Shown in pieces: positions 147 through 51,630 of a stretch of DNA of 64,000 bases. Source of the DNA: Octopus sinensis (Eukaryota). The translations under genes and the position numbers were made by a program. A model generated the notes under the pieces. That model was not told the DNA's origin. It searched no databases and saw only the letters and a list, made by a program, of their open reading frames with translations. The stretch's first letter is position 1. Each line of letters opens with the position of its first letter. The stretch spans positions 79,980,001-80,044,000 of the forward strand of contig NC_043006.1 in the NCBI RefSeq assembly GCF_006345805.1, in the 5' to 3' direction.

Positions 147-2153
147 ATGTCTTTGAAAATGGAAACAGCTTTTGAATTGGTTGTAGTTTGTCTTTTATTG
201 TTCTCAAATATTGTAACATATGCAGGATACTTCAACAACTGTAGCCCAGCTTTGTGCTCCCATCCTCCCGGCCATAACACACCAGAACGCTGTTCGTGTC
301 GTCCGGACTGTTACCTCTACAAGGAATGTTGTTCTAACATGGCTAATAAGAGCACTTCTAATCACAAACAATCCTATCCATCACTATATTACAGATGTAC
401 AAGTTTTGGTAAACCTCATGATTATGACACTTATTATCAGTTTGACCGTTGTCCGCCTAACCATGATGTTACGGAGTATGTGAACCACTGCGAAAATCCT
501 GACTCAGATGATCAACTACAAAACATACCCGCTTTTGGTAAAACAAGTAAAATACTCTATAGAAACCTGTATTGTGCTCTGTGTCATGGAGAAGAATTTA
601 TTCTTTGGAATCTTTTATATGGATGCCGCTCGTACTCTAATATAAACTTAGAAAATATAGCGTATTCTCTGAAGAAGAAAAGGTGTCGGCTAGTGAAACA
701 ACCTCCAGAAGATTTGAAGAAATATTTGCATTCTTGCATTGAATTTATTTCGAGTTGTCCACAAGATAGTAATAAAGAACAAACGGTGGCATGTGAGTCT
801 GAGCCAATGGCGTTAATATATGTAAATAGGGTGTTTTACAAAAATAATGACTGTGCCAAATGTAATGGGGTTTCAGCTCCGTGTAATCAATTTTATATGA
901 AGGCCAAGGCAATGAAATATATTCCTTCACTGGCATTCCTATTCGATCCCAACATGAATTCCTATATGGAAACAAATACAAAAACGAAAACGAATCGTAC
1001 CGGTGTACTGAGGAACTCATGTCCAAAGCACGCTGTCTACGATATCAATACCAATCAATGTCGACAAGTTATCTTCCATCCTCCACTAAACTGTATGACA
1101 ACAAGATTAAATGAATCTGAGTATTACATTACTAGTGACGATCGTCTCTACTTAAATAATACCCAACGTTTTCTGAACCAATCAGAATTCACTCGAGATT
1201 CTCAAGATATAATAAGTATCTGTGTAAACAATGGTACCAATAATATATCAAATATCAATGGTATATCAAAATATTCCGTAGCTGAGAGCTATATCACATT
1301 AGTGGGACTCGTAATCTCTATTCCAGCTCTTGCAATCACTATTATAGTCTATCTCTGTATACCTGATCTCCGTACCTTACCAGGTAAATTACTCATTAGT
1401 CTTTTGTTAGCACTGTTTGTAGCTGAACTTCTCTTTCTTATCTCATCACAAGTCACTAAATCTACAGTGCTGTGCAAATATTTAGCAGTAGTAATGCATT
1501 ATTCGTTTCTAGCGACTTTCTTCTGGATGAATGTCATGTCAGTTGATGCCTGTCACACATTCTCAGGACTCACACAACTTCGAAGTAAAGGAAAACACAC
1601 CAAGAGATTTGTATTTTGTTCCTTGTATGCTTGGATCTGTCCACTTGTAATAGTAACAGTATCACTGGTATTTGAGTATATTCCTGGAAATCACGGACTT
1701 TCCCCAGACTATGGAAAAGATATTTGCTGGATTAAAAATGGAAAAAGTCTGCTATGTTTTTTTTTAATCCCTGTAATGATTATTTTATGTCTTAATTTCG
1801 TAGCCTTTACCCTCACCGCTAGAGGGCTCTATTTGGCACGTAAACTTTCAACGAAATATTTATCTAAACATAATAAACTGGAGTGTATCATTTGCGTAAA
1901 ACTATTCTTTATCATGGGACTAACATGGACATTCGCATTTCTGTATACGTTTACAAGAATTGAAGAATTTTCTCTATTATTTTGTATTTTAAACTCATTC
2001 GTTGGATTACTTATATGTTTATCGTTTCTATCAACAAGTATTGCTCGACGCAGTATTTTTCAGAATCTGCAAAAAATTACAAAAACATCCACAAAAGAAT
2101 CTGTTGATGTTAATTTCGCTCATAAAACAACATCAACGAATATAACTCCATAG
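147..2153 (+). CDS. Receptor copy A: intact single-exon SMB-like/Cys-rich ectodomain plus class B (Methuselah-like) 7TM GPCR, type-1 ectodomain
   Basis: 668-aa ORF; likely start is aaaATGg at 159 with signal peptide METAFELVVVCLLLFSNIVTYA; SMB-like CSCRPDCYLYKECC; 7TM motifs LRTLPGK, HYSFLATFFWMNVMS, YAWICP, CWI, KLFFIMGLTW; no GPS motif. Confidence 0.9.
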   Translation: MSLKMETAFELVVVCLLLFSNIVTYAGYFNNCSPALCSHPPGHNTPERCSCRPDCYLYKECCSNMANKSTSNHKQSYPSLYYRCTSFGKPHDYDTYYQFDRCPPNHDVTEYVNHCENPDSDDQLQNIPAFGKTSKILYRNLYCALCHGEEFILWNLLYGCRSYSNINLENIAYSLKKKRCRLVKQPPEDLKKYLHSCIEFISSCPQDSNKEQTVACESEPMALIYVNRVFYKNNDCAKCNGVSAPCNQFYMKAKAMKYIPSLAFLFDPNMNSYMETNTKTKTNRTGVLRNSCPKHAVYDINTNQCRQVIFHPPLNCMTTRLNESEYYITSDDRLYLNNTQRFLNQSEFTRDSQDIISICVNNGTNNISNINGISKYSVAESYITLVGLVISIPALAITIIVYLCIPDLRTLPGKLLISLLLALFVAELLFLISSQVTKSTVLCKYLAVVMHYSFLATFFWMNVMSVDACHTFSGLTQLRSKGKHTKRFVFCSLYAWICPLVIVTVSLVFEYIPGNHGLSPDYGKDICWIKNGKSLLCFFLIPVMIILCLNFVAFTLTARGLYLARKLSTKYLSKHNKLECIICVKLFFIMGLTWTFAFLYTFTRIEEFSLLFCILNSFVGLLICLSFLSTSIARRSIFQNLQKITKTSTKESVDVNFAHKTTSTNITP

Positions 2154-4034
2154 TTGTGCAGTCAAGCTAACCAATGTGGGTTACTCAATATCGTCAGTGG
2201 AATGAAGATGGAAATAATGGATAATAAATTATATATTAAATCTGAATAAATGACATGATGGTTCTTACTAGAATACCTTTGACTATAGATCTTCGAGACT
2301 ATGAATCAGCTGAGATTACCAAGTTCAACAATTAACAACATTCTGAACTGAAATTCCTAAAATGCCGATTCGGAAAAAAAGAAATGAAAAAATAAAAGGG
2401 AAAATTATGTTTTCTAGATTCTATTTGAATTCGTATAAGATAAACGCCTTGCAAGTGTGAAGGGTATGTGCCTATTTCTTTCAGGAACTTGCCCTTTTAT
2501 TTTTGGCCATTTCTCCTGTTCTTCGATATATTTAAATTTTCATGTCAACCTGAGCTGTTGAACGGACTCACTTTTTGCTGAAAACCCCATATAGTTAGTA
2601 ATTTTATTGTATCCTTTTTTTCTATCCTTTTTTGTATTCCATTTATATTCTGTTGACCTAACATTTTACGAATATGTGGGTTTTATGAAGTTTGAGCTCA
2701 CTCATGTCTCTCTCCCTGTCTTTTAGTTCGGTCAAACGATTTTAAATGGTTTTAAATAATCTCGTTCACTTCCTATATTATATAATCTCTTCCTCACACA
2801 TATGGAATAATCACGATATACGTTTTGGAAAACGCTTTGAAAAACATTTATTACGTCACATGTAACGGGATTTGTAGAGATACTAGTGTGTGTGAAAAGA
2901 GTCTACCACTCGTGTATCACATTTCTATGCCAACTCTATTAAAATATTATTATTCGTCGCTTTTAGTTATCCAATTAATTCTCTAGTAATCAGCTCTGAT
3001 TTGTCCAGCAAGCAAAATGTTGCTGTGCGTTTCCTTTTCTGTCCGTAGAACGTTATCTACGGAGAGATCTGATGTTGTTAAAAAGAATGCTGACAACATC
3101 GCATCAGTTTTATAATATTTTCAACAAGTCTTTTGGTCTTTTTGCATAAGAAAATAATTGTTTCGCCTTGAGCAAAATCGGTTTATTGTAAACGCTATTT
3201 CTAATTGTGGTATTACTTCCATATAAATGTGTTAAATCAAGGACAATATCCAAACCACGATATATATACCATATAATAATCAGACGATGTCGACTCCTTA
3301 GCCGTTATTCTTATTGTCTAATACATAGTAAAACAACGGGATTAAATGAATCATAATATCCTGTCATTAATGATGAGCATTTTAACTTACGTACTCTATA
3401 TCTGTAATATTAAATTATATAAAGAGAATATAATAAAAAGCACTTCATAAATACAAAATTTGTTTTTTTATTACGTGTTGAATATCCATGTTCCTCTATG
3501 CGTTTATGAAGACTGAAAAGCTTCTCTGTTATAGTCATTCTTTCTATCAATATAGCTTGCCTGCTGCTATTTCAAATGCTGAACGAAATTTGAAAGTTAT
3601 CTTCCACGAAATTTACCGATATAGTTTGAGCTTCTCAATAAACGTTATCAGTAGATTTTAAGTAACATTACTGCAGGTTTCTGTGTAAACGTGAACTGAT
3701 ATTGCTAATGTTGTTGGGAAAGCGTAACATTTCTTGCCTTATTCGTTCTCTGAATCGAGTCCAGTCAATATTAATTCTGAAAGCTCGGCTCGTGTTGTAT
3801 ATTTCCATTTACGTAACTAATTTATATGAATTTGCTAGAAGGAAAAAAAATGTCCCTTTTTTTATAATTATCTAAATTACAAAACCTTTGCGCTAATATT
3901 ATAATGAAATCAAAGCTATTAATCAATACCGTTTCATTTACTGCTCTATGAATCACTATAGATTTTGCTAAACTATCTGAGATTTTAACGTAAGCTTAAT
4001 CAATATATGTTGTCTGAAGTAAATATTCATTCTA
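2154..4034. repeat. 3' flank of A, inverted duplicate of 47686-49569 (3' flank of D)
   Basis: Continuous reverse-complement match by eye from the stop codon to ATTCTA at 4029-4034, over 90% identity. Confidence 0.9.
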
Positions 4035-9541: not shown

Positions 9542-12500
9542 TTCTTGATCAATCCTAGTGCTCCTACGATCACTAGTATTGTAACCGCCTTGAGATGTCA
9601 CATTTTCTCAATTTCAATGAGTAGGACTTTATATTTTTTGAGCTTGTCAAACTCTTTCGCTGAGATATTATGATCACAGGGGATGCTCATGTCGATCAAT
9701 AAGCAAACTTTATTGTTTTGGTCTTTCACAACAATATCTGGTTTATTGGCCTTGATGGTTCGGTCTGTAATGCCGACTTATTAGCCAGTGTAGATATTGG
9801 CCAACTCTGTCATGTCTTAATTTATACTCCACTGGTGCTAAGACTTTACATCCAGAGATTAGGTGGTCCACTGTTTTAATCATGTCGTTGCAGAATCGGC
9901 ATTTTGGGTCTGCTCCATTTTTCATCACATTGGCCTGGTAGTTCCGGGTTAATAGGCTTTGATCTTGAGCAGCCAGGATGAAACCTTCGCTCTCTGCTTT
10001 TAGCCCTGAGCTCCGTAGCCACTGATGGGTTTGCTTCTGGTCAACATCAGCTTGTTTGCTGCGGGTCACATATTTGCCGTGCAGAGGTTTCTCCTCCCAC
10101 CTATCAGCCAATTGCTCGTGCGCTTTTTTCGTTGCTATCATCTTCACCTTCTTTGCAACAATAGTTGCCGTACTTCCCTCGGGTTGTTCAGTTTGGGTAT
10201 CCTGCACGAGATCAATAGCAAATGTTTTGCTTTCGTTTATGATAGAATGAAGCTTCTTTCGTCTCTCGTGATTTTCCACGTGCTTTAGCATCCAGTCATT
10301 CGATATTTCGAGATATTTGGCCAGTCCAATTGTGGTTGTTTTGTGAGCTAGTTCAAATTGGATCAGGCCTCGACCTCCTAGGGCTCTGGGAAGGTAAAGG
10401 CGATCTACGTCTGCCTTTGGGTGGTGCATCCTATTACAACTCAGCAGCTTGCGTATTTTTCTATCTATATTCTTTACTTCACTCATATTCCAGTTCAACA
10501 CATTGTAGCTATAAGTAACAACTGGAACTGCTAAGGAATTTATAGCTAACACCTTGTTACGTGCATTTAGTTCAGATTTCAGGACTGCACGAACTCTCCT
10601 ATAACATTCCTTCCTGATTTTCTCTTTCATGCTTGCATGCTGAAAACCAGAGCCTTCATTTATCCCTAAATATTTGTATGTTTGTTCTTGCTCAAGCTCT
10701 CTTATGACTGTGTCAACATCTAACACGACTGAATTTGTGGTCTTCACTTTCTCTTTCTGGAAAGTGGCCTTGGCACACTTCTCAAGTCCGAACTCCATCC
10801 CGATGTCTTCGCTGAATGCTTTCACGGTGCGCAATAGGCCTTCAAGTTCATTATTGTCTTTACTATAAAGTTTTAAGTCATCCATATAAAATAGATGGCT
10901 TATTTTTTTATTGGCAATTTTATACCCATACCCTGTTCTGTTTAATTCACTTGTAAGGGGTATTAGGGCTATGCAGAATATTAAAGGTGAAAGTGAGTCA
11001 CCTTGAAAAATTCCACAGTTGATGTTTATATTTTCTGAGGCAAGTACTCCATTAGAGTGGTATAATTGGAGATTCGTATTCCACAACGACATATTGTGCT
11101 TCAGGAAGTTTGAAATCACAGGGGAAATTTTGAAGATGTCCAGCGATCTCAAGATCCATGGATGCGGTATACTGTCGAAGGCCTTTTTGTAGTCAATCCA
11201 TGCGGAGCTGAGATTTCTGCGCTTGTTGTGACAGTTCTCAAGAATCATACGATTGATTAGCAGTTGATCTTTGCATCCGTAAGAGCCTCGGCGCCACCCT
11301 TTTTGTTCTATGGGGAAAATATCGTTCTTCTCCATGAATGCATATGTTTTCTCCGCCAGGATAGATGTTAGGATTTTATACGTGGTGGATAGACAGGTTA
11401 TAGGCCGATAGTTTTTTGGAAGGTTGGTTTCGTTATTCTTTGGGAGTAGGTAAGTAATACCACTTGCTAACCATTCAGGTGTTTTCTTTGGGTCTCTCAT
11501 AATTCCATTGAGCAGCTGAACTAGCTTACCGTGTGCGCATGGGAGCGATGCGAGCCAGAAATTCGGCACCCTATCTTTACCGGGGGATTTCCAATTATGG
11601 GCCTTCGTGAGTGCCTTTCTTAGGTCTGCTATTGTGATGTCTTCCCATGCTTGTTGTTGTAAATTTTGGTAGGATCCTTCAGATTGTATAATCCAGTCTG
11701 CATTTATGTTGTACGTCTTCTTGTCACTCCAAATCCTTTTCCAAAAGTTTTGAACTTCTTCCATGGGAGGGGGATCTTTAACGGTTACTTTCTCCTTCCC
11801 TATTTCTCTGTAGAATTTTTTGGCATTGGATGTGAACAGCTTATTTTGCTTGTAAAACTTGTTTCTCTTCTCAAATCTTCGTATTCTTTGGGCTTTTGCT
11901 TGGACTTTTTGTTTCAGCGTTTCTTTTATTGATATCACTTCTTCTCTTGGTGAGGATCCAAATTTTCTCTTCATCTTTCTTCCTGTTCTGGATCTTACAT
12001 CACTTCCACATATTAGTTCATTTAATATTGATATTTCCCCTCTCATAAATTCAATCTCTTTTTCAATTTTACTTCTCCAGGTTTGATTTCTTCCCAGGTT
12101 TGGTATTCTTTGTTTTTTCGGGGACATACTGCTGGTTTCAATTGCCCTAGCAGAAGCGTAAATAATTTCATTTAACTCAGTAAAATCAGATTTTAATTCT
12201 CGTATTATTTCATTTGTTACATAGTTGCCAATTTGGATTTGTTTTTTTATTTTGGTTTGTATTTGAGAGTTTATGAAGTGGTTCTCTATCATTCATACTT
12301 GTATGTCTTACAACTTCAAGCGTATTCAGGATTTTCTGCCTCATTTCTGCCATAGACTCTCTGTGTTCTTCAGCAAATGCGAGATCTTCAGTTACTGTTG
12401 TTTTTTCGTTTTCCTGGCTGTCTTTAACAGGTACAATAGAATTTCTTGTATCTTCAGGCCTTTGCGTACTTTGGTCAGATGGCAGTCTTTCAATTAAGCC

Positions 12501-14470
12501 TCGTGGCGGGCTATACTGTTCATCTGATTCTTCATTTCCTTTGTGTCTTATATTTATGTCATTTTCCGTTGCGTGCTTGATCGCGCTTATTTCACTGTCT
12601 GTGAGTCTGTTATTTCTAAGGATATCCCTCATCACATTTGCTAATTTGTTCTTGTCCAAATAGGGCCTACTGTCTTGATTCCGTGTTCTCCATATACTGT
12701 AAGAGTTTGCGGTGTGTCTCTCTTGAGATGGCCTACCTAATGCATAGTAATAAGCGTATATTACTTCTTTATACTCTTCTCGGGTCCATTTGTTCCGCTT
12801 ACATTTTTCTTTCTGTGGTGGTTGTGGTGGTGAACTTGGAGGGCTCGAGTTGGGGGATTTCCCGTTCAAGTGACCATCCATGTCCGTATTCGTTGAAGAG
12901 TTTGTGCCAGTTGATGACTTTTCGATCCCAGGCTGGCTCTTCCCTGGGGGACGCGCTTCCAGATTAACCATAGGACAAGCGATTTGGTATACTGATTTAG
13001 TTTTCCTTTTAGTTTCTAGAAACATTTTGGTGCTACGATAATGTTATCATTTTTGAGCTTTGATTGGCTCGTGGGGAGACGGCCATCATTGCCGTTACTA
13101 TTATAATCGTACCATTATAGCAGCCGTAGTCGGCTTGTTATTGTTATTATCATCACCATTACCATCACTATCATCATTATCACCACCATTACCATCATCA
13201 TTATCATCATCACCATCACCATCACCACCATCATCTTCAATGATATTGTTTTATGTGTAGTCACAGCAGTATCTTATTATTGTTATTTTTGTTTTTTATC
13301 ATTATCACCATCACAGTAGTGTCTGTCTGTCTCGTTGGCTGGCTTGGTGGTTGGCTGGCTGACTGTCTTCAACACCAGAGTTCTTGCCTGTCAAATAATA
13401 CTTTCTTTGTGTTGGTTGAACTCTTTGAGTGTGTGTGCGTGTAGACAGATAGATAGATTATCAGCACTATTACTATCATTTTTATCATCATCATCATCAT
13501 CATCACTATCACCATCAGTGATTTTTTTTTTGTCCTATCGGTCAAAAAAAGTTCAGATGTTTACTACTATTAGGCTTAAGAAAAATTAAGGAAGGGCTGT
13601 TCTGTATTGTTTGTGAATAGAGAAGTTGTGTTCAACCAGAGAGAATCTTAGCATCATCATTTTTTTTTTCCATGTGCGTTTGTGTTATTGCAATAAAAAG
13701 TGTTTGTATATTTCGTGCTTATTTTGAAGGGCTGTTCTGTATTATTTGTGAATAGAGAAGCTGTGTTCGACCAGAGAGAATCTTAGCATCATTATTTTTT
13801 TCATGTGCGTTTGTGTTATTGCAATAAAAAGTGTTTGTATATTTCGTGCTTATTTTGAAGGGCTGTTCTGTATTATTTGTGAATAGAGAAGCTGTGTTCG
13901 ACCAGAGAGAATCTTAGCATCATTATTTTTTCCATGTGCGTTTGTATTATTGCAATAAAAAGTTTTTGTATATTTCGTGCAAGGTAATATTGTGGAGGTT
14001 GAAGTTGACCCCTCTAGAGATGTTTGTATGTGCAGTTAGAAGAACAGGTGTGTTTTTGCAATAAAGAGTATATGTTTACCTTTATATTTGAATATTCTGG
14101 GAGGAAGCAAAGAAAAGTAAGATTTTCATAGAAAGTTTTAGGGTTTTGCAAGTCCACAAAAAGAAAAGCGTGATGTTTCTAGAGAGAAGAAAAAAAAAGG
14201 ATGTTTACAGAGGCAATTGTGGGTATCAAAGGTTTTTAAAGCCGATCGGATGTATGTTTGAAAGCTGCAGATATGTAAATTTGTAAATTTCTTAACACAC
14301 TTTGAAGTGAATTTCAAATACTCACGAGGTATTGTAGATGTTCCAGTCTTTGAGAGTTATTTTTCCCCGTTGCTAAACTGGCCCATATTAGTGTTTCTAT
14401 GGCTTTCAGCCACCGAACTGTCAGAGCAGTGAGGAACACGTCCAGCCGCTGTCAAGGCAGGCGCTCTTCC
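9539..14470 (-). mobile_element. R4/Dong-clade retrotransposon, family X copy X2 (near full length)
   Basis: ORFs 12210-13025 and 9743-12292 (frameshift in an A-run); RT motifs; CRFC..H....C zinc knuckle; RHDRV; about 95-bp deletion in the RLE region; 5' end abuts (AAT)n. Confidence 0.92.
13591..13980. repeat. Three tandem 125-135-bp units in the X2 5' UTR
   Basis: GAAGGGCTGTTCTGTATT starts at 13591, 13726 and 13857; single copy in X1. Confidence 0.9.
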
Positions 14471-17685: not shown

Positions 17686-18274
17686 GGAATTTGGCTGTTA
17701 TTTCTAGCATGTAAATAGCATGCTTGCGGGGGAGGATACTTATTTTTGTTTTTAAAGAATTGAAATTTTACAAAGAGTTTTATTTTTCAGATTCATAATC
17801 TCCTTATTTTTGTACGTATTTCGCCAAAAAAAAAAAAAATTTCCTGAAAAAGTGCAAAAAACGAAGTAATGGGGAGGGGGTGGAAATTCAAAGTTTGTAG
17901 TTGCGGAGTTTTGAAAAATTTTCTGTAGAATCGAAATCTCCATAGCCTAAAACGTGGGATTCCATAAAAAAAATGAAATTTAAGGGGAAAAGGGTTCCGT
18001 TTACATATCCTCCATCTGGACCGAAGCAATCAACATAACTGTGAATGTAGACACAACTCCAGCAACGGAGTTCTCCTTAACCAGGTTATCCAAAGAGATC
18101 CAGAAGAGACCCAAAGAGATCCAGAAGAATATCATGGCGATCACACGGAATCAGCCTCTGCTGCTACCTCAGTGCAAAACCTATCCTCGTCACTGTTATT
18201 AACCCATAAATTTCTATCGAGACCTCTAAAAAGGTCTGACCAGGCCACTACTCCAGTCTCAACATTCTTACCCA

Positions 18275-19430
18275 ATGTTCAAGGCATATGCACACCCTTC
18301 CATGCAATGCATTGAGGATTTGGTTACCGACCACACTCATCACGTTCCCTTCTTCTTCCTTACTGAAACCTACCTTAACAACTCCCACTTGGAAGCTGAA
18401 GTAAAAGTAAGGAATTTCACCACAATCCGAGGTAGAAAAATGGTAGGATTTGTCATATTCCTACAAGACTCATTTACTGCGGAAAGAAATGTCACATTTT
18501 CCAAGGGCTATTGTGAATCAGTATCATAATGATTTAGAAATAATTGGGCTCTACAGGTCAGCTCATGCACCGCTATTGTGCTTCAAGGACTGCCTCACGA
18601 ACATCAAGTCTTTCATTCAACAATGTCATCCTGATAATATTTTAATGATTGGCAACTTCAATTTCCCCTGTATTAACTGGTCTACTCATACCCTGAAAAC
18701 TGGTGCGTACAGTTTCACTTCAGACAAAGCCGCAGTGGAATCCCTATTTCAATTTATGGATGAATTTTTCCTATCCCAACTCGTGCTCGTACCAACGAGA
18801 TTCAACAAGAACATTCTGGATTTAGTGCCAAGCAAACACACAAACAATATCCACGATATTTCAGTGGAAAACTCTTCTTTCGACCACTCTATGGTTTTCT
18901 GTCACCTAAGATTCTGGCAGCCAATTGCGTATCCGAGTAATCTCAATCACTCACACCTCTTCAATCTCATGGATCTTCACAATGCTAAATGGTCTGCAAT
19001 CAACCACGAGCTCTCACTCATTGATTGGCCTTTCGCAGACAACTTTACTACAAGAAGCATTGATTCATCATGGCTGCTATTTATGGACATTTTCACAAAC
19101 ATATGATTACACTCACCTACTGTTCATGAACAAGACAAAATACGGACTAACACTTCCCAGAAAATCACTCATACGAAAGATAAAGAGAACGAATCAAAAA
19201 ATGAACCGGGTAAGATATTGCTAGTTGCAACACTTCCACATGGCGGATATAGGCTCACTAGAATCAAGGAAACACCATCTCCAAAACTGTTTGAGAAATG
19301 TTATTGACGATCAAAGAAAAGCAGAAGAGAAATGGACCATTGATTAAATAAATGCCAACCCGAAAGTGTTCTTCTCATTAGCTAAAAGGCATGATGTCGC
19401 AGTCTCATCTATTGGACATCTCGTTGATGA
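18275..19430 (+). mobile_element. CR1/L2-type LINE ORF2 fragment (AP endonuclease plus linker), degenerate
   Basis: FLTETYL, IIGLYRS, GNFNFPCINW, PTRFNKNILDLV, DHSMV, NPKVFFSLAK. Confidence 0.85.
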
Positions 19431-19433
19431 AAA

Positions 19434-19617
19434 ACACACACACACATACACACACACACACACACACAAACACACAAACACACACACACACACACAAACA
19501 CACAAACACACACACACACACACAAGCACGCACGCACGCACATATATATAGTTACTTCAAACATGAACAAAGAGAAAGCACAACGCGAGTACGTGGAACA
19601 AATATGGTGTTATTGGA

Positions 19618-19679
<62 letters not shown>

Positions 19680-19772
19680 TACATACATATATACACACGC
19701 ACACATATATATATACATATATATATATATATACATACATACATACATATATACACACGCACATATATAAAT

Positions 19773-19815
<43 letters not shown>

Positions 19816-19830
19816 AATGTGTGTGTCTGT
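19434..19830. repeat. Compound (CA)n/(TA)n microsatellites
   Basis: Direct inspection. Confidence 0.95.
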
Positions 19831-20207
19831 GTATATGTAAGACTTCCATTATACATATCCTGAAAACTCACAACTTTGCTTTGTTATCTCATTCTGTCTA
19901 ATATATATATGCATGCTAGTACAAGACACACCTCAGACTCCTCACTCGTATCATTATCGAACCAAGAGTTTAACTACGGTCCTTCCATAGCATTTACTTA
20001 GCGTTACCTGCTACCATTTGTGTCTTCTAGATACGAATACCTCTCATATATGTTTACCTATAATGGAGAAATTATACAAAATGTATAAAAAGATGAGTAA
20101 AGCACCGGTACAGTTTTGTTTATATGTTGTTAACCGTAGATTTATTGTAGGAACTTCGTAGTGGCGGTTAGGGTAACAGTATTAATAAAATAGATGGATT
20201 GAGTAAA

Positions 20208-20249
20208 ATACGACATTTGTTTCGACCCGTTATGGGTCTCCTCAGGTAC
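20208..20249 (-). ncRNA. Minimal type I hammerhead ribozyme motif, family H1
   Basis: gtac CTGAGGA gaccc-ataac-gggtc GAAA c-aaat-GTC gtat: full core, 5-bp stem II, short stem III, GUC site. Confidence 0.75.
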
Positions 20250-20480
20250 ATCGGTATAAAGTTTCAGTAGAGAGGTTCTGATTCGATTTTACGTACCGCT
20301 ATATGTCCATCAACTTCGCGAATGAGTAAAAGACAAGGAAAAATTAAAACACGAAAAAACTTCAAATATGAACATGGAACATTCTAGTTTAGAGAAAATG
20401 ACTTGATGAGTCTTCACTGTTCAGAGTGAATATACTGCTATCATGTTCTTAAGAATGAAATTTACCGCTTTACACAAACA

Positions 20481-27498: not shown

Positions 27499-29456
27499 AT
27501 GTCTTTGAAAATGGAAACAGTTTTTGCATTGGTTGTAGTTTGTCGTTTATTGTTCTCAAATATTGTAACATATGCAGATAACTTCAACAACTGTAGCCCA
27601 GGTTTGTGCTCTGATCCTCCCACTCATGACACATCAGAACACTGTTCGTGTCGTCCAGACTGTTACATCTACATGGAATGTTGTTCTGTCATGATTAATA
27701 AGAGCACTTCTAATCACAAACATTCCTATCCATCACTATATTACAGCTGTAGAACATTCGGCAAACGTTATGATCGTAAAACTTTGACCGTTGACCGCCT
27801 AACAATGATGTTACGGAGTATGTGAACAACTGCGAAAATCCTGACTCAGATGATCAACTACAAAACATACCCGCTTTTGGTAAAACAAGTAAAATACTCT
27901 ATAGAAACCTGTATTGTGCTCTGTGTCATGAAGAAGAATTTATTCTTTGGAATCTTTTATATGGATGCGACTCCATCTCTGATGTAAGCTTTGAAAATAT
28001 AACAAATTATCTCAAGAAGGAAATGTGTTGGGCAGATGTGAGACCTCCAGAAGATTTGAAGAAATATTTGTATTCTTGTATTCCATTTATTTCGAGTTGT
28101 CCACAAGATAGTAATAAAGAACAAACGGTGGCATGTGAGTCTGAGCCAATGGCGTTAATATATGTAAATAGGGTGTTTTACAAAAATAATGACTGTGCCA
28201 AATGTAATGGGGTTTTAGCTCCGTGTAATCAATTTTATACTACTTTCGAGCCCTCGAAATTTATTCCTGCACTGACAATCCTATTCTATTACAACACGAA
28301 TTCCTTTATGGTAACAAATGAACAGACCAGTACAAATCGTATCGGTGTACTGAGGACCTCATGTCCAAAGGACGCTGTCTACGATATCAATACCAATCAA
28401 TGTCGACAAGTTATCTACCATCCTCCACTAAACTGTACGACAACAAGATTAAATGAATCTGAGTATTACATTACTAGTGATGGTCGTCTCTACTTAAATA
28501 ATACCCAACGTTTTCTAAACCAATCAGAATTCACTCGTGATTCTCAAGGTATAATAAGTATCTGTGGAAACAATGATACCAATAATATATCAAATATCAA
28601 TGGTATATCAAAATATTCCGTAGCTGAGAGCTATATCACATTAGTGGGACTCGTAATCTCTATTCCAGCTCTAGCAATCAGCATTATAGTCTATCTCTGT
28701 ATACCTGATCTCCGTTCCTTACCAGGTAAATTGCTCATTAGCCTTTTGTCAGCACTGTTTGTAGCTGAGCTTCTATTTCTTATCTCGTCACGAGTCACTA
28801 AATCTACAGTACTATGTACATCTTTAGCTGCAGTAATGCATTATTCGTTTCTAGCCACTTTCTTCTGGATGAATGTCATGTCATTTGATGCTTGGTACAC
28901 TTTCTCGGGACTCACACAAATTCGAAGTAAAGGAAAAAACACCAAGAGATTTGTATTTTGTTCCTTGTATGCTTGGATCTGTCCACTTGTAATAGTAACA
29001 GTATCACAAATATTTGAGTATATTCCTGGAAATCTTGGACTTTCTCCAGAGTATGCAAAAGATATTTGCTGGATTAAAAATGGAAAAAGTCTGCTATGGT
29101 TTTATTTAATCCCTGTAATGTTTATTTTATGTCTTAATATCATAGCGTTTACCCTCACCGCTAGAGGGTTCTATTTGGCACGCAAACTCTCTTCGAAATA
29201 TTTATCAAAACATAAGAAATTGGAGTTTATCATTTGCGTAAAACTATTCTTTATCATGGGGCTAACATGGACATTCGCATTTCTGTATACGTTTACAAGA
29301 ATTGAAGAATTTTCTCTATTATTTTGTATTTTAAACTCATTCGTTGGATTACTTATATGTTTATCGTTTCTATCAACAAGTATTGTTCGACGCAGTATTT
29401 TTCAGAATCTGCAAAAAATGACAAAAACATCCACAAAAGAATCTGTTGATATTTGA
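27499..29456 (+). pseudogene. Receptor copy B, type-1 ectodomain, pseudogene
   Basis: 10-bp deletion after 27783 relative to A; TGT>TGA at 27792-27794 in the native frame; last 14 codons lost at the junction with C; otherwise open 7TM. Confidence 0.88.
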
Positions 29457-30611
29457 TATATTATTGGTACCATTGTTTACACAGATACTTATTATACCTT
29501 GAGAATCACGAGTGAATTCTGATTGGTTCAGCAAACGTTGGGTATTATTTAAGTAGAGAAGATCATCATTAGTGACGTAATACTCAGATTCATTTAATTT
29601 TGTTGTCGTACAGTTTAGTGCAGGATGGTAGATGACTTGTCGACATTTCTTAACTCTCAAATCGTAGATAGCGTATTTTGGACAGGAGGGAGACTGCACA
29701 TATCTAGTTTCCGTTTTGTATACTCTATTTGTTACCTTTACAGTTTTGGTATCATAATCAAAAAGTATTGTTAGAGAAGAATATGTACTTTTAGCTTTAT
29801 CAAAATAATTCACTTCACATATATCACTGGAAAACCCGTTGCATATAGCACAACCTTTGTTTTTGTAAACTTTAAGAAATTTATATATGCCATTTACAAG
29901 GTAGTCTGTGCTAGACTCCATATATATCAATGCCATTGGCTCAGACTCACATGCCATTATTTGTTCCTTATTATTGTTATCTTGAGGACAATTCGAAATA
30001 TATGGTGTACAATGATGCAAATATTTGATCAAATATGATTGAAGCTCTACTGTTGGCATACAGCTATCCTTGAGATAATTTGATATATTTTCAAAGGTTA
30101 CATTAGAGATTATGTAGCAGTTATATACAAGATTCCAGAGAATGAATTCCTCTCCATAACACAGAGCACAATACAGGTTCCTGTAGAGTCTTTTACTTGT
30201 TTTACCAAAAGCAGGAATGATCTGAAGTTGATCCTCTGAGTCAGGATTTTCACAGTTGTTAACATACTCAATAACATCATGGTTATCTGGACAACGGTCA
30301 AACTGATAAGCATAATCATTACCAGCTTTTCGGCAACTCATAGTTGGGTAGTTTGTGATAGAAGAGGTCTTACTAATAATGTCAGAACAGCATCCATTGT
30401 AGAGGTAGCAGTCTGGTTGACACGAACAACGTTCCGATGCGCCATCTGAACACAAAGCTGGGCTACAATTGTTGAAGTATCCTGCATGTGTTATAACACT
30501 TGAGAACAAAAGAACGCAAACTAAAAACAATGTTTCCATTTTAAAAGATATAATTAATGATGCATGAATTAACCTTTCAAATCCTAATAGTTCTTTGATA
30601 TTTTGCTTCAC
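29373..30611 (-). CDS. Receptor copy C: open ORF with signal peptide and nearly complete type-2 ectodomain, no 7TM (388 aa from ATG 30539)
   Basis: No stops over about 364 ectodomain codons; homology to D ends at NNISNIN (29446), then 24 codons read antisense into B. The ORF-track start is GTG. Confidence 0.7.
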   Translation of the reverse strand: MKQNIKELLGFERLIHASLIISFKMETLFLVCVLLFSSVITHAGYFNNCSPALCSDGASERCSCQPDCYLYNGCCSDIISKTSSITNYPTMSCRKAGNDYAYQFDRCPDNHDVIEYVNNCENPDSEDQLQIIPAFGKTSKRLYRNLYCALCYGEEFILWNLVYNCYIISNVTFENISNYLKDSCMPTVELQSYLIKYLHHCTPYISNCPQDNNNKEQIMACESEPMALIYMESSTDYLVNGIYKFLKVYKNKGCAICNGFSSDICEVNYFDKAKSTYSSLTILFDYDTKTVKVTNRVYKTETRYVQSPSCPKYAIYDLRVKKCRQVIYHPALNCTTTKLNESEYYVTNDDLLYLNNTQRLLNQSEFTRDSQGIISICVNNGTNNISNINRFFCGCFCHFLQILKNTASNNTC

Positions 30612-34800: not shown

Positions 34801-35025
34801 ACACACAAAAAATTTTCGTCTAAGTATTATCTTCCTTTCAACTTTTGCATCCTTTTCTCCCTCTCTTAACGCTTACTACAATGAAGACTCATTAAGTCAT
34901 TTTCTCTAAACTAGAATGTTCCATATTCATATTTTTCCTTGTTTTTTACTCATTCGCGAAGTTGATGGACATATAGCGGTACGTAAAATCGAATGAGAAA
35001 ATCTCTAGTAAGACCTTTTACTGAT

Positions 35026-35067
35026 GTACCTGAAGAGACCCATAACGGGTCGAAACAAGTGTCGTAC
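35026..35067 (+). ncRNA. Hammerhead motif H1 (best copy)
   Basis: gtac CTGAAGA gaccc-ataac-gggtc GAAA c-aagt-GTC gtac. Confidence 0.8.
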
Positions 35068-35493
35068 CCAATAAAATGTTTTACTCAATCCATCTATTTT
35101 ATTAATACTGTTACCCTAACCGCCACTACGAAGTTCCTGCAATAAATCTACGGATTACAACATATAAACAAAACTGTACCGGTGCTTTACTCATCTTTTT
35201 ATACATTTTGTATAATTTCTCCATTATAGGTAAACATATATGAGAGGTATTCGTATCTAGAAGACCCAAAGAGTAGCATTAACGCTACGTAAATGCTATG
35301 GACAGACCGTAGTTAAACTCTTGGTTCGATAATGATACGAGTGAGGAGTCTAAGATGGATCTTGTACTAGCATGCATATATATGTTAGATAGAATGAGAT
35401 AACAAAGCAAAGTTGTGAGTTTTCAGGACATGTATAATAGAAGTCTTACATATACACACACACACACATATATATATATTCACACACACACAC

Positions 35494-35533
<40 letters not shown>

Positions 35534-35576
35534 GTATATATATATATGTGCGTGTGTATATATGTATGTATATGTG

Positions 35577-35610
<34 letters not shown>

Positions 35611-35730
35611 TCCAATAATACCATAATTGACCCACGTCCTCGCGTTGTGCTTTCTCTTTGTTCATGTTTGAAGTGACTATATATATGTGCGTGAGTGTGA
35701 GTGTGTGTGTGTATGTGTGTGCGTGTGTAT

Positions 35731-35762
<32 letters not shown>

Positions 35763-35774
35763 TTGTGTGTTTTC

Positions 35775-36950
35775 ATCAACGAGATGTCCAATAGATGAGA
35801 CTGCGACCTCATGCTTTTTAGCTAATGAGAAGAACACTTTCGGGTTGGCATTTATTTAATCATTGGTCCATTTCTTTTCTGCTTTTCTTTAATCGTCAAT
35901 AACATTTCTCATAAAGGTTTGGTGATGGTGTTTCCTTGATTCTAGTGAGCCTATATCCGCCGTGTGGAAGTGTTCCAAATAGCAATATCTTAGGCGGTTC
36001 ATTTTTTGATTCGTTCTCTTTATCTTTCGTATGAGTGATTTTCTGGGACGTGTTAGTCCGTATTTTGTCTTGTTCATGAACCATAGTGGGGTAAAATCAT
36101 ATGTTTGTGAAAATGTCCATAAATTGCAGCCATGATGAATCAATGCTTCTTGTTGTAAAGTTGTCTGCGAAAGGCCAATCAATGAGTGAGAGCTCGTGGT
36201 TGATTGCAGACCAGTTAGCATTGTGAAGATCCATGAGATTGAAGAGGTGTGAGTGATTGAGATCACTCGGATACGCAATTGGCTGCCAGAATCTGAGGTG
36301 ACAGAGAACCATAGAGTGGTCGGAAAAAAACGTTTCCACTGTAATATCGTGGATATTGTTTGTGTGGTTGCTTGGCACTAAATCCAGAATGTTCTTGTTG
36401 AATCTCGTTGGTACGAGCACGAGTTGCGATAGGACAAATTCATCCATAAATTAAAATAGGTATTCCACTGCGTCTTTGTCTGAAGTGAAACTGTACGCAC
36501 CGGTTTTCAGGGTATGAGTAGACCAGTTAATACAGGGGAAATTGAGATTGCCCATCATTAAAATATTATCAGGTTGACATTGTTGAATGAAAGACTTGGT
36601 GTTCGTGAGGCAGTCCTTGAAGCACAATAGCGGTGCATGAGCTGACCTGTAGAGCCCAATTATTTCTAAATCATTGTGATACTGATTCACAATAGCCCTT
36701 GGAAAATGTGACATTTCTTTCTGCAGTAAATGAGTCTTGTAGGAAAATGACACCTCCTACCATTTTTCTACCTATGCGGTCTGCTCTGATTGTGGTGAAA
36801 TTCCTTACTTTTTACTTTCAGCTTCCAAGTGGGAGTTGTTAAGGTAGGTTTCAGTAAGGAAGAAGAAGGGAATGTGCTGAGTGTGGTCGGTAACCCAATC
36901 CTCAATGGATTGCATGGAAGGGTGTGCATATGCCTTGAACATTGGGTAAG
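35775..36950 (-). mobile_element. CR1/L2 endonuclease fragment, paralogue of 18275-19430
   Basis: Same motifs in ORFs 36097-36447 and 36451-36753. Confidence 0.85.
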
Positions 36951-37491
36951 AATGTTGAGACTGGAGTAGTGGCCTGGTCAGACCTTTTTAGAGGTCTCGG
37001 TAGAAATTTATGGGTTAATGACAGTGACGAGGATAGGTTTTGCACGGAAGATGCAGCAGAGGTTGATTCCGTGTGATAGCCATGATATTCTTCTCGATCT
37101 CTTTGGGTCTCTTCTGGATCTCTTTGGATAAAAAATAAGAATTAACCTGGTTAAGGAGAACTCCGTGGCTGGAGTTGTGTCTACATTCACAGTTATGTTA
37201 ATTGCTTCGGTCCAGATGGAGGATATGTAAACGGAACCCTTTTCCTCTTAAATTTCTTTTTTCACGGAAGCCCACGTTTTAGGCTATAGAGATATTCTAA
37301 TATCCTTTGAGTAAAATCCAAAAGTCCAACAGGGTTTAATATGAGTCCTTCCAAATATAGAGTTTATAAGCAATGTAAGATTCCATTATGATTGAGATCC
37401 ATCAGATTTTTAAACTTGGTCATTCCCAGTAGGAAATTTATATAGATTTCTGCAGAGTCAAAGATTTGTGACTTAACTTTCATCTCACACC

Positions 37492-49569: not shown

Positions 49570-51630
49570 CTACGGAGTTATATTCGTTGATGTTGTTTCA
49601 TGAGCGAAATTAACATCAACAGATTCTTTTGTGGATGTTTTTGTAATTTTTTGCAGATTCTGAAAAATACTGCGTCGAACAATACTTGTTGATAGAAACG
49701 ATAAACATATAAGTAATCCAACGAATGAGTTTAAAATACAAAATAATAGAGAAAATTCTTCAATTCTTGTAAACGTATACAGAAATGCGAATGTCCATGT
49801 TAGCCCCATGATAAAGAATAGTTTTACACAAATGATAAACTCCAATTTCTTATGTTTTGATAAATATTTCGAAGAGAGTTTGCGTGCCAAATAGAGCCCT
49901 CTAGCGGTGAGGTTAAACGCTATGATATTAAGACATAAAATAAACATTACAGGGATTAAAAAAAACCATAGCAGACTTTTTCCATTTTTAATCCAGCAAA
50001 TATCTTTTCCATACTCTGGGGAAAGTCCGTGATTTCCAGGAATATACTCAAATACCAGTGATACTGTTACTATTACAAGTGGACAGATCCAAGCATACAA
50101 GGAATACAATACAAATCTCTTGGTATGTTTTCCTTTATTTCGAAGTTGTGTGAGTCCTGAGAAAGTGTGACAGGCATCAAATGACATGACATTCATCCAG
50201 AAGAAAGTGGCTAGAAACGAATAATGCATTACTACAGCAAAAGATTTACACAGCACTGTAGATGTAGTGACTTGTGATGAGATAAGAAAGAGAAGCTCAG
50301 CTACAAACAGTGCTGACAAAAGACTAATGAGTAATTTACCTGGTAAGGTACGGAGATCAGGTATACAGAGATAGACTATAATGGTGATTGCTAGAGCTGG
50401 AATTGAGATTACGAGTCCCACTAATGTGATATAGCTCCCAGCTACGGAATATTTTGATACACCATTGATATTTGATATATTATTGGTACCATTGTTTACA
50501 CAGATACTTATTATACCTTGAGAATCACGAGTGAATTCTGATTGGTTTAGCAAACGTTGGGTATTATTTAAGTAGAGAAGACCATCATTAGTGATGTAAT
50601 ACTCAGATTCATTTAATTTTGTTGTCATACATTTTAGCGGCGGATGGTAGATAACTTGTCGACATTTCTTAAATCTCAAATCGTAGATAGTGTATTTTGG
50701 ACAGGAGGGAGACAGCACATATCTATTTTTCGCTTTGCTTAATTCATTTACCTTTACAGTATTGGTATCATAATCAAAAAGTATTGTTAGAGGAACAGTT
50801 CCTCCACTACCAGCTATTTCATGATAATTCACTTCACAAATATCACTGGAAAACCCGTTGCATATAGCACAACCTTTGTTTTTGTAAACTTTAGGAAATT
50901 TATACATGCCATTTACAAAGTAGTGTGCGATCGACTCCGTATATATCAATGCCATTGGCTCAGACTCACATGCCATTATTTGTTCCTTATTATTGTTATC
51001 TTGAGGACAATTCGAAATATATGGAGTACAATGATGCAAATATTTGATCAAATATGATTGAAGCTCTGCTGTTGGCGTACAGCTATCCTTGAGATAATTT
51101 GATATATTTTCAAGTGTGACATTAGAGATTCTGTCGCAGTTATATAAAAGATTGCAGAGAATGAATTCCTCTCCATGACACAGAGCACAATACAGGTTCC
51201 TGTAGAGTCTTTTACTTGTTTTACCAAAAGCAGGAATGATCTGCAGTGGATCCTGTGAGTCAGGATTTTCACAGTTGTTAACATACTCAATAACATCGTG
51301 GTTATCTGGACAACGGTCAAACTGATAAGCATAATGATCACCAGCTTTTCGGCAACTGATAGTTGGGTAGTTTGTGATAGAAGAGGTCTTATTAATAATG
51401 TCAGAACAGCATCCATTGTAGAGGTAGCAGTCTGGTTGACACGAACAACGTTCCGATGCGCCATCTGAACACAAAGCTGGGCTACAATTGTTGAAGTATC
51501 CTGCATGTGTTATAACACTTGAGAACAAAAGAACGCAAACTAAAAACAATGTTTCCATTTTAAAAGATATAATTAATGATGCATGAATTAAGCTTTCAAA
51601 TCCTAGTAGTTCTTTGATATTTTGCTTCAC
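49570..51630 (-). CDS. Receptor copy D: intact, type-2 ectodomain plus 7TM (662 aa from ATG 51558)
   Basis: Open ORF; signal peptide METLFLVCVLLFSSVITHA; SMB-like CSCQPDCYLYNGCC; 7TM about 93% identical to A. Confidence 0.9.
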   Translation of the reverse strand: MKQNIKELLGFESLIHASLIISFKMETLFLVCVLLFSSVITHAGYFNNCSPALCSDGASERCSCQPDCYLYNGCCSDIINKTSSITNYPTISCRKAGDHYAYQFDRCPDNHDVIEYVNNCENPDSQDPLQIIPAFGKTSKRLYRNLYCALCHGEEFILCNLLYNCDRISNVTLENISNYLKDSCTPTAELQSYLIKYLHHCTPYISNCPQDNNNKEQIMACESEPMALIYTESIAHYFVNGMYKFPKVYKNKGCAICNGFSSDICEVNYHEIAGSGGTVPLTILFDYDTNTVKVNELSKAKNRYVLSPSCPKYTIYDLRFKKCRQVIYHPPLKCMTTKLNESEYYITNDGLLYLNNTQRLLNQSEFTRDSQGIISICVNNGTNNISNINGVSKYSVAGSYITLVGLVISIPALAITIIVYLCIPDLRTLPGKLLISLLSALFVAELLFLISSQVTTSTVLCKSFAVVMHYSFLATFFWMNVMSFDACHTFSGLTQLRNKGKHTKRFVLYSLYAWICPLVIVTVSLVFEYIPGNHGLSPEYGKDICWIKNGKSLLWFFLIPVMFILCLNIIAFNLTARGLYLARKLSSKYLSKHKKLEFIICVKLFFIMGLTWTFAFLYTFTRIEEFSLLFCILNSFVGLLICLSFLSTSIVRRSIFQNLQKITKTSTKESVDVNFAHETTSTNITP

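What the first reader, a model, noticed from the sequence alone, without database searches (positions are those of the whole stretch)
627..1001. Two sharply bounded hypervariable patches between A and B
HV1 (A 627-701 vs B 27969-28043): 16 of 25 codons change amino acid and only 2 are purely synonymous. HV2 (A 897-1001 vs B 28239-28343): 19 of 35 change and 2 are synonymous only. The adjoining blocks differ at about 2 of 140 bp and 1 of 150 bp. This contrast points to diversifying selection on ligand-contact loops or patchwork gene conversion.
Basis: seen in the sequence. Interest (0 to 1): 0.8.

Follow-up and report, generated by a model that had tools for sequence, protein, structure and literature searches.

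The report
Swapped variable loops in octopus receptors
Two neighbouring copies of an octopus-specific cell-surface receptor gene are almost identical except for two short stretches of the outer domain, and the cause is mainly patchwork copying between gene copies rather than point-by-point adaptive change.

Summary

The window is Octopus sinensis chromosome CM016868.1. A (147-2153) is an intact, apparently unannotated class-B "Methuselah-like" GPCR with a DUF8401 ectodomain. B is a frameshifted, 3'-truncated copy.

HV1 and HV2 are the family's two most variable ectodomain segments. HV1 is a predicted helix plus strand. HV2 is a loop plus beta-hairpin.

Synonymous divergence is raised as much as non-synonymous in the patches: pS 0.18-0.27 against 0-0.03 in the flanks, omega about 1.1-1.4. 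So this is mosaic ancestry, not recent in-place positive selection.

The O. vulgaris ortholog of A differs from A at 0.3-2.7% of sites outside the two patches. Between about A-positions 600 and 1215 it groups with B. One lineage therefore underwent a conversion within about 2.5 My.

A second copy in O. vulgaris shows a clean 170-bp HV2 swap with an identified donor type. No donor for A's own patches was found in about 310 kb of cluster DNA, so the direction of that event is unresolved.

Diversifying selection is suggested (omega at or above 1) but not established. This is a new member of a known kind and moderately interesting.

The parts
147..2153 (+). Gene A: intact intronless ORF of 668 aa. 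Class-B 7TM receptor (7tm_2) with a Cys-rich DUF8401-type ectodomain. No protein for it is on record.
627..701 (+). HV1 in A (residues 161-185). The substitution-dense core is 627-671 and an indel zone lies at 688-700. Predicted helix 168-176 plus strand 180-185, between Cys160 and Cys180.
897..1001 (+). HV2 in A (residues 251-285). Against the O. vulgaris ortholog it extends from 886. HV2a (886-926) is an indel-rich loop with low pLDDT. HV2b (927-1001) forms beta-strands 262-287.
600..1215 (+). Tract of discordant ancestry in A. Within it the O. vulgaris ortholog of A groups with B_sin and not with A_sin. The first discordant sites are 621-628 and the last is 1207. Outside the tract A_sin equals A_vul.
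558..626 (+). Conserved block coding YRNLYCALCHGEEFILWNLLYGC. It is the left homology anchor of HV1.
834..869 (+). Conserved block coding FYKNNDCAKCNG, the second copy of the Y(R/K)N..CA.C.G motif. It is the left homology anchor of HV2. The B_vul conversion tract starts at about 864-866.
1017..1070 (+). Conserved block coding SCPK..YD....CRQV. It is the right anchor of HV2. The B_vul tract ends at about 1029-1035.
27499..29456 (+). Copy B. It has a 10-bp deletion after 27782 that shifts the frame, and its 3' tail is truncated. It is annotated as LOC118765232 with an 'intron' that skips the defect. Its HV1 is 27969-28043 and its HV2 is 28239-28343.
29446..30539 (-). Copy D: an ectodomain-only fragment of the C/E type. 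It is joined tail-to-tail to B.
49570..51558 (-). Copy C: an intact 662-aa paralog. Its ectodomain is about 25% diverged from A, while its 7TM region and 3'UTR are 95-99% identical to A.

Best explanation
A and B belong to a tandem cluster of octopus-specific, intronless Methuselah-like class-B GPCR genes. The sequences in this cluster are a patchwork made by interlocus (ectopic) gene conversion.

HV1 and HV2 are the two family-wide hypervariable segments of the DUF8401 ectodomain. Each lies just downstream of one of two conserved Y(R/K)N..CA.C.G cysteine motifs and is bracketed by conserved coding blocks. Inferred: these blocks supply the homology for short conversion tracts. The variable segments are then either carried across as cassettes or left unconverted while their surroundings are homogenised, and this gives the sharp boundaries.

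The A/B contrast exists because A_sin carries a tract of about 0.6 kb (about 600-1215). Its conserved parts are about 97% like B, but its two variable parts are about 30% different at synonymous and non-synonymous sites alike. The O. vulgaris ortholog of A carries B-like sequence throughout that tract. So a conversion happened in one of the two lineages after they split, about 2.5 My ago.

Shown: the mosaic ancestry, the recombination signal, and one cassette swap with a donor.
Inferred: the role of the anchors. Also inferred is that weak constraint or diversifying selection keeps the loops variable.
Unresolved: the direction of the A event. Either an unsampled donor converted A_sin, or a B-type copy converted A_vul.
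For: - Patch pS is 0.18-0.27 against 0-0.03 in the flanks. Third codon positions differ at 11/59 sites in the patches against 5/210 in the flanks, Fisher p=4e-5.
- A_sin and A_vul differ at 20/87 (HV1) and 40/116 (HV2) but by only 0.3-2.7% elsewhere. The F orthologs differ by 0.4% overall and 0/206 in the same segments.
- In the A_sin/A_vul/B_sin triplet, 45 of 56 informative sites between 486 and 1141 join A_vul with B_sin, against 7 of 97 outside. Chi2 is 84.7 and 0/300 permutations reach it. All 5 'mid' and 5 'post' low-divergence sites agree.
- Between about 864 and 1034, B_vul has 7 mismatches to E_sin and none to C_vul in 925-1034, but 80 mismatches to A_vul. It is A-like on both sides of that stretch.
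- Mosaicism is family-wide. From about A-position 1200 through the 3'UTR, A, B, C and E differ by 0-11%, although their ectodomains differ by 10-57%. The 3' half of B's 7TM region is C-type.
- HV1 and HV2 have the highest family-wide entropy: 2.24 and 2.30 bits against 1.15 for the rest of the ectodomain and 0.82 for the 7TM region.
- The species split about 2.5 My ago (PMC10700109).
Against: - No donor at or above 90% identity was found for A_sin's HV1 or HV2. The search covered 17 O. sinensis copies (~232 kb), 4 O. vulgaris copies (82 kb) and 37 database proteins. A_vul's HV2a and B_sin's N-terminal block are likewise orphans.
- GC3 is not raised in the homogenised regions, so there is no biased-conversion signature.
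- Within the closest trio (A_vul, B_sin, B_vul) the HV differences are almost all non-synonymous. That pattern fits selection on point changes better than import of old sequence.
- The two assemblies were not checked against raw reads.
Confidence: 0.7

Rival explanations
1. Diversifying selection acts in place. Point substitutions were driven to fixation in ligand-contacting loops, with no transfer of sequence between copies.
For: - Omega is at or above 1 in the HV segments for every pair. It is 0.3-0.9 elsewhere.
- Recent pairs show almost only replacement changes in the HV segments. A_vul-B_sin has 2.2 synonymous against 29.8 non-synonymous differences. Pooled over two independent pairs, omega is 3.3 with p=0.008.
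- These segments are the family's most variable and mostly structured.
Against: - In the A/B patches synonymous divergence is raised as much as non-synonymous (pS 0.18-0.27, omega 1.1-1.4, not significant).
- About 60 changes in 203 bp arose between orthologs that differ by 0.3-0.9% in the 7TM region and the 3' flank. The F orthologs show 0/206 in the same segments.
- The low-divergence sites between and beyond the patches share the discordant phylogeny.
- The significant omega>1 rests on the indel-rich HV2a. Without it p=0.19.
Confidence: 0.1
2. The patches are an assembly or polishing artefact. Either A_sin (PacBio CLR assembly) or A_vul (ONT assembly) was locally 'corrected' with reads from another paralog or haplotype.
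For: - A_sin's patches match nothing else that was sampled.
- The patch lengths (75-105 bp) are of short-read scale.
- Both assemblies were built from error-prone long reads; for O. vulgaris this is shown. That such assemblies are polished with short reads is from my own knowledge, not checked here.
Against: - The patches stay in frame. They keep the conserved Cys180 and the PSL..LF and N.N motifs.
- Mis-polishing should make a copy resemble a paralog in the same genome. A_sin's patches resemble none. A_vul's HV1 is 15% from B_vul, and B_vul's HV2 is C/E-type.
- The same kind of mosaic appears in two independent assemblies.
Confidence: 0.07
3. A locally targeted mutational process (hypermutation or untemplated diversification) acts on the two loops in the germline.
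For: - There are several orphan patches without donors.
- At least three lineages changed independently in HV2a, with unchanged flanks.
Against: - The F orthologs are unchanged in both loops, so the process is not general.
- Transition/transversion counts in the patches (22:28) match those in the rest of the gene (53:55). There is no special spectrum.
- One HV2 change is demonstrably templated.
- No associated machinery was seen in the window.
Confidence: 0.05
4. The difference is decay of the pseudogene B under relaxed constraint.
For: B is frameshifted and 3'-truncated. Omega is about 1 in the patches.
Against: - Polarised with A_vul, about 41 patch changes are specific to A_sin and only 8 to B_sin. 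About seven of the 41 (694-700) reflect the HV1 indel.
- B's frame stays open for 544 codons.
- Neutral divergence over the relevant time is about 0.4%.
Confidence: 0.03

Closest known systems
Octopus-specific Methuselah-like GPCR expansion ('group 4' of Ritschard et al. 2019, PMC6408891)
   Same: The genes are tandemly clustered class-B (PF00002) GPCRs found only in octopuses. Database neighbours are named Mth2 or Mth-like. My 7TM omega of about 0.34 matches their family-wide 0.306.
   Different: That study reported homogeneous purifying selection and no positively selected sites, and it did not test for recombination. Here the ectodomain has two hypervariable segments with omega at or above 1, and the cluster is a conversion mosaic. 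That mosaic violates the single-tree assumption of their tests.
Regional gene conversion in clustered protocadherin genes (fugu study PMC1852091, which cites Noonan et al. 2004 and Wu 2005 for zebrafish and mammals)
   Same: Tandem receptor paralogs have a 3' part homogenised at synonymous sites. Diversity is kept in the recognition part of the ectodomain, possibly under diversifying selection.
   Different: The protein family is unrelated. In protocadherins whole EC domains escape conversion and GC3 rises in the converted parts. Here the unconverted or swapped units are 75-170 bp loops, and GC3 does not rise.
Patchwork micro-conversion in MHC peptide-binding regions and in vertebrate chemoreceptor arrays (from my own knowledge)
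   Same: Short tracts shuffle variable motifs between paralogs or alleles. Boundaries are sharp, and replacement changes are in excess at ligand-contact positions.
   Different: No ligand or contact site is known here. Polymorphism was not examined. Donors were found for one tract only.
Drosophila Methuselah (Mth), ectodomain structure of West et al. 2001
   Same: The 7TM domain is of the class-B2 / adhesion-like type. The closest solved structures are ADGRG2, ADGRD1 and ADGRL3, with target-normalised TM-scores (TMt) of 0.8-0.88.
   Different: There is no Methuselah_N Pfam hit even at E<=10. The ectodomain model has no PDB fold match at E<=0.001. The ectodomain is DUF8401. Non-arthropod Mthl members are known to lack the Mth ectodomain (PMC4768249).

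Membership tests
Class B (secretin/adhesion) GPCR, Pfam 7tm_2 | Seven-helix domain matching PF00002 above the gathering score | tested here: met
   A scores 98.7 bits (cut-off 20.6) over residues 381-623. C scores 103 bits. The AF2 model shows 7 long helices. The best PDB matches are adhesion GPCR 7TM domains, with target-normalised TM-scores (TMt) of 0.74-0.88.
Methuselah/Mthl family in the strict sense (with the Mth ectodomain) | Methuselah_N ectodomain (PF06652, 10 Cys forming five disulfides) | tested here: not met
   No Pfam family matches residues 1-380 at E<=10. No fold match to any PDB entry was found. The precomputed annotation gives DUF8401 instead.
Mthl family in the broad sense (7TM-defined clade; octopus 'group 4') | Placement of the 7TM domain in the Mth/Mthl clade by phylogeny | not tested
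   This rests on database names (Mth2, Mth-like) and on Ritschard et al. 2019. No tree was built here.
Adhesion GPCR | GAIN domain with a GPS autoproteolysis motif next to TM1 | tested here: not met
   No GPS or GAIN Pfam hit at E<=10. The ectodomain model has no match to GAIN-containing structures.
Interlocus gene-conversion mosaic | Phylogenetic discordance along the sequence beyond chance | tested here: met
   Three triplet max-chi-square tests all gave 0/300 permutations reaching the observed value: chi2 84.7, 104.1 and 27.6 against permutation maxima of 16-19.
Interlocus gene-conversion mosaic | Divergence raised or lowered at synonymous sites, not only at replacement sites | tested here: met
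   Patch pS is 0.18-0.27 against 0-0.03 in the flanks. Third positions differ at 11/59 against 5/210.
Interlocus gene-conversion mosaic | An identifiable donor for the tract | tested here: inconclusive
   Met for B_vul's HV2: an E/C-type donor, 96-100% identical over about 170 bp. Not met for A_sin's HV1 or HV2. About 158 kb of the cluster could not be fetched.
Interlocus gene-conversion mosaic | GC3 enrichment in converted regions (biased gene conversion) | tested here: not met
   GC3 is 0.25-0.31 in the homogenised stalk and 7TM region, against 0.38-0.40 in the divergent N-terminus. This feature is supportive rather than obligatory.
Sites under diversifying selection | dN/dS significantly above 1 in the segments | tested here: inconclusive
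   For the A/B patches omega is 1.1-1.4 (not significant). For recent pairs pooled, omega is 3.3 (p=0.008) with HV2a and 2.1 (p=0.19) without it. Counts are small, estimates are Nei-Gojobori only, and recombination is present.

The most novel reading that the evidence does not exclude
HV1 and HV2 could be exchangeable cassettes. A standing archive of intact, broken and fragmentary ectodomain copies (B, D and unannotated relatives) would then repeatedly re-equip the two binding loops of expressed receptors in the germline. Selection would favour new loop combinations. This would be a receptor-diversifying system in a sucker- and nerve-cord-expressed octopus GPCR family, working like pseudogene-templated conversion in other recognition systems. 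The orphan patches would then be imports from archive members that are unannotated or absent from the reference haplotype.
Probability: 0.12. Interest if true: 0.8.

Novelty: new member of a known kind. Interest (0 to 1): 0.5.

Why it matters
This family is one of the two octopus-specific GPCR expansions. It is expressed mainly in the axial nerve cord, suckers and skin of O. bimaculoides (PMC6408891). Its ligands are unknown.

Three things follow from the result.
- It points to the two short segments where the copies differ most. These are the first places to test for ligand specificity.
- It shows that whole-gene, single-tree selection tests on this family are unreliable, because the genes are recombination mosaics.
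- It shows that orthologs in sister species that split about 2.5 My ago can already differ by about 30% in two loops.

The work also turned up an intact gene with no protein on record and a gene model that hides a frameshift behind an 'intron'.

Tried and rejected
- Donor search for A_sin's patches. I ran blastn-short and tblastn of HV1 and HV2 against the window, eight further O. sinensis loci covering about 168 kb beyond the window (L001 lies within it), and 82 kb of O. vulgaris (L002). I also inspected all 37 database homologs. Nothing was closer than 84% over 64 bp, and that hit was B itself.
- Exact-protein look-ups of A and of P0024 found nothing on record.
- Mutation spectrum. Transition/transversion counts are 22:28 in the patches and 53:55 outside. 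There is no A-to-G or other bias, so I dropped editing-like or deaminase-like explanations.
- The GC3 test for biased conversion was negative.
- Ectodomain fold search. There was no PDB match, so the loops could not be mapped onto a known ligand site. The tools return no coordinates, so the question of whether the two patches share one surface could not be tested.
- Pseudogene decay of B as the cause was rejected by polarisation with A_vul.
- An early 9-sequence nucleotide alignment misplaced the HV1 indel and inflated the A_sin-specific changes at 694-700. I corrected this from the 3-sequence alignment.
- Codon projections that ignored indels overstated pN. I redid them with a protein-guided codon alignment.

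Full report
WHAT THE WINDOW IS

The window is AT-rich (34.6% GC) eukaryotic DNA. Window 17499-39164 is 100% identical to Octopus sinensis GCA_006345805.1, chromosome CM016868.1, positions 79,997,499-80,019,164. The window therefore covers about 79,980,001-80,044,000.

It holds four copies of one intronless gene:
- A, 147-2153 (+): an intact ORF of 668 aa.
- B, 27499-29456 (+).
- D, 30539-29446 (-): the ectodomain only.
- C, 51558-49570 (-): an intact ORF of 662 aa.

A and C match Pfam 7tm_2 at 99-103 bits. Their relatives carry DUF8401 in the ectodomain. All close relatives are octopus proteins named "Mth2" or "Mth-like". This is the octopus-specific Methuselah-like expansion, "group 4" of Ritschard et al. 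2019. That study reported expression mainly in the axial nerve cord, suckers and skin, a homogeneous omega of 0.306, and no positively selected sites.

A has no protein on record. B is broken. A 10-bp deletion after 27782 shifts the frame, and the 3' tail is cut where D abuts it. The NCBI model LOC118765232 (P0008) bridges the frameshift with an "intron".

CHECK OF THE OBSERVATION

- HV1: 26/75 nucleotides differ, 16/25 codons change amino acid, 2 codons are synonymous-only.
- HV2: 30/105 nucleotides differ, 19/35 codons change amino acid, 2 codons are synonymous-only.

The flanks differ at 4/186, 5/195 and 6/150 sites. No permutation of the A/B mismatches gives windows as dense (0/20,000). 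The last 9 bp of HV1 are two compensating 3-bp indels.

IS THIS SELECTION ON NEW MUTATIONS OR DIFFERENT ANCESTRY?

Nei-Gojobori estimates on a protein-guided codon alignment give the following proportions of differences:

| Segment | pS | pN |
|---|---|---|
| HV1 | 0.24 | 0.31 |
| HV2a | 0.27 | 0.29 |
| HV2b | 0.18 | 0.26 |
| rest of the ectodomain | 0.03 | 0.03 |

Third codon positions differ at 11/59 sites inside the patches and 5/210 in the flanks (p=4e-5). Silent divergence is therefore raised as much as replacement divergence. Positive selection on point mutations cannot produce that. The patches have a different and older history than their surroundings.

THE ORTHOLOG COMPARISON

An 82-kb O. 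vulgaris locus (L002) holds the syntenic ortholog of A, called A_vul here. A_sin and A_vul compare as follows:

| Region | Differences |
|---|---|
| 3' flank | 5/1647 |
| CDS after HV2 (stalk, 7TM and C-terminal tail) | 10/1152 |
| HV1 | 20/87 |
| HV2 | 40/116 |

The F gene pair (L007 and L002) gives the species baseline. It differs by 0.4% overall and 0/206 in the same two segments. The species split about 2.5 My ago (PMC10700109).

Site patterns in the A_sin/A_vul/B_sin triplet are decisive. Between A-positions 486 and 1141, 45 of 56 informative sites join A_vul with B_sin. Outside that range 7 of 97 do (chi2 84.7, permutation maximum 17.2). The A_vul-with-B_sin sites include all five low-divergence sites between the patches (729, 737, 741, 742, 874). 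They also include five sites after HV2, up to 1207.

So a tract of about 0.6 kb (about 600-1215) has discordant ancestry. Either A_sin was converted by an unsampled donor, or A_vul was overwritten by a B-type copy and A_sin keeps an older A-type sequence. At several family-wide conserved positions A_sin is the only deviant (650, 662-663, 667, 737, 741-742). Both directions are compatible with this.

A CASSETTE SWAP WITH A DONOR

The decayed O. vulgaris copy B_vul is A/B-like up to about 863 and again from about 1035. Between those points it has 7 mismatches to E_sin. It is identical to C_vul over 925-1034, and it has 80 mismatches to A_vul. This clean tract of about 170 bp encloses HV2. It starts in the conserved FYKNNDCAKCNG-coding block and ends in the SCPK...CRQV block.

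This shows directly that HV2 moves between paralogs as a unit. It supports the inference that the conserved motif-coding blocks act as homology anchors.

THE WIDER MOSAIC

From about A-position 1200 through the 3'UTR, A, B, C and E differ by 0-11%. Their ectodomains differ by 10-57%. The 3' half of B's 7TM region is 0-1% from C but 7-11% from A. B's N-terminal block (226-430) is 11-18% from A and has no donor. GC3 is not raised in the homogenised parts.

WHAT THE TWO SEGMENTS ARE IN THE PROTEIN

Across 22 octopus family members, HV1 and HV2 have mean column entropies of 2.24 and 2.30 bits. The rest of the ectodomain has 1.15 bits and the 7TM region 0.82 bits. The most variable 25-residue windows start at residues 234-245.

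An ectodomain-only AlphaFold2 model has mean pLDDT 73.
- HV1 is predicted as a helix (168-176) plus a strand (180-185), at pLDDT 78-84.
- HV2a includes a low-confidence loop (249-255).
- HV2b forms three beta-strands (262-287), at pLDDT 71-84.

The segments are therefore not mere disordered linkers. Each follows one copy of the Y(R/K)N..CA.C.G motif. The ectodomain has no Pfam match in the local library and no PDB fold match. The 7TM part resembles adhesion GPCRs. Whether the two segments share one surface could not be tested.

SELECTION

Omega is 0.34 in the 7TM region, 0.4-0.9 in the non-HV ectodomain, and at or above 1 in the HV segments for every pair.

In the closest pairs almost all HV differences are replacements. 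A_vul-B_sin has 2.2 synonymous against 29.8 non-synonymous differences. Pooled over two independent pairs, omega is 3.3 (p=0.008). This depends on the indel-rich HV2a. Without it omega is 2.1 (p=0.19).

Diversifying selection is thus plausible as the force that keeps the loops variable. It is not demonstrated, and it is not the cause of the A/B contrast.

WHAT REMAINS OPEN

No donor for A_sin's patches was found in 17 O. sinensis copies, 4 O. vulgaris copies or 37 proteins. About 158 kb of the cluster next to the sampled parts could not be fetched. Because A itself is unannotated, further copies may be hidden there. Raw reads were not available to exclude local assembly error. In-frame conservation of the key residues and the parallel mosaic in an independent assembly argue against such error.

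VERDICT

The feature is real and statistically strong. It is best explained by patchwork interlocus gene conversion. That conversion acts around two hypervariable ectodomain segments which are weakly constrained or under diversifying selection. The process is of a known kind. It has not been described for this octopus receptor family, where it undermines earlier single-tree selection analyses and marks the likely specificity-determining segments.

Noticed in passing
window 147-2153 (+): Gene A is an intact 668-aa receptor ORF, yet no identical or near-identical protein is in the searched collections. It appears to be unannotated in the O. sinensis assembly.
   Followed up: partly
window 27782/27783 and 27499-29456: Copy B has a 10-bp deletion that shifts the frame. 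The NCBI model LOC118765232 (P0008) bridges it with an 'intron'. The downstream frame nevertheless stays open for 544 codons.
   Followed up: yes
window 29446-29456: B (+) and the ectodomain-only fragment D (-) are joined tail-to-tail. The junction overlaps by about 8 bp and has TTGAT(A/G)T microhomology. This looks like a fold-back or inverted-duplication breakpoint.
   Followed up: partly
window 29068-29292 (A-positions 1726-1950): The 3' half of B's 7TM region is 0-1% from C_sin and C_vul but 7-11% from A. This is a further conversion tract, outside the finding.
   Followed up: partly
window 27578-27782 (A-positions 226-430): The N-terminal block of B is 11-18% diverged from A_sin and A_vul, with omega about 1.2. 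No donor was found among the sampled copies.
   Followed up: partly
window 1200-2400 vs 49330-50520 (-): From the stalk through the non-coding 3' flank, A and C are 95-100% identical, although their ectodomains are about 25% apart. Homogenisation extends beyond the coding sequence.
   Followed up: partly
L002 57386-59700 (O. vulgaris): B_vul is a decayed copy with several frameshifts. Its HV2 (A-positions ~864-1034) was replaced by E/C-type sequence.
   Followed up: yes
L002 9908-9941 (A-positions 888-921): A_vul has its own unique mini-patch in HV2a: 11 changes in 34 bp at sites where A_sin and B_sin agree with each other. It also has 3-bp and 9-bp in-frame insertions elsewhere in the ectodomain.
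   Followed up: partly
window 657-668 and 987-995: A_sin's HV1 loses the family-wide N-I-(T/S) glycosylation sequon (ENIT to ENIA). A_sin's HV2 gains an N-R-T sequon that B lacks.
   Followed up: no
window 9743-12292 (-) and 12210-13025 (-): An 849-aa ORF carries a reverse-transcriptase domain (RVT_1, E=1.5e-30), with an adjoining 271-aa ORF. This is a retroelement lying between the receptor copies.
   Followed up: no
window 17933-20344 vs 34931-37297: Inverted repeats of about 2.4 kb at about 91% identity flank the B/D pair. The copy order and orientation here differ from the O. vulgaris locus: A, B, D(-), C(-) in this window, against A, C, B, F in L002.
   Followed up: no
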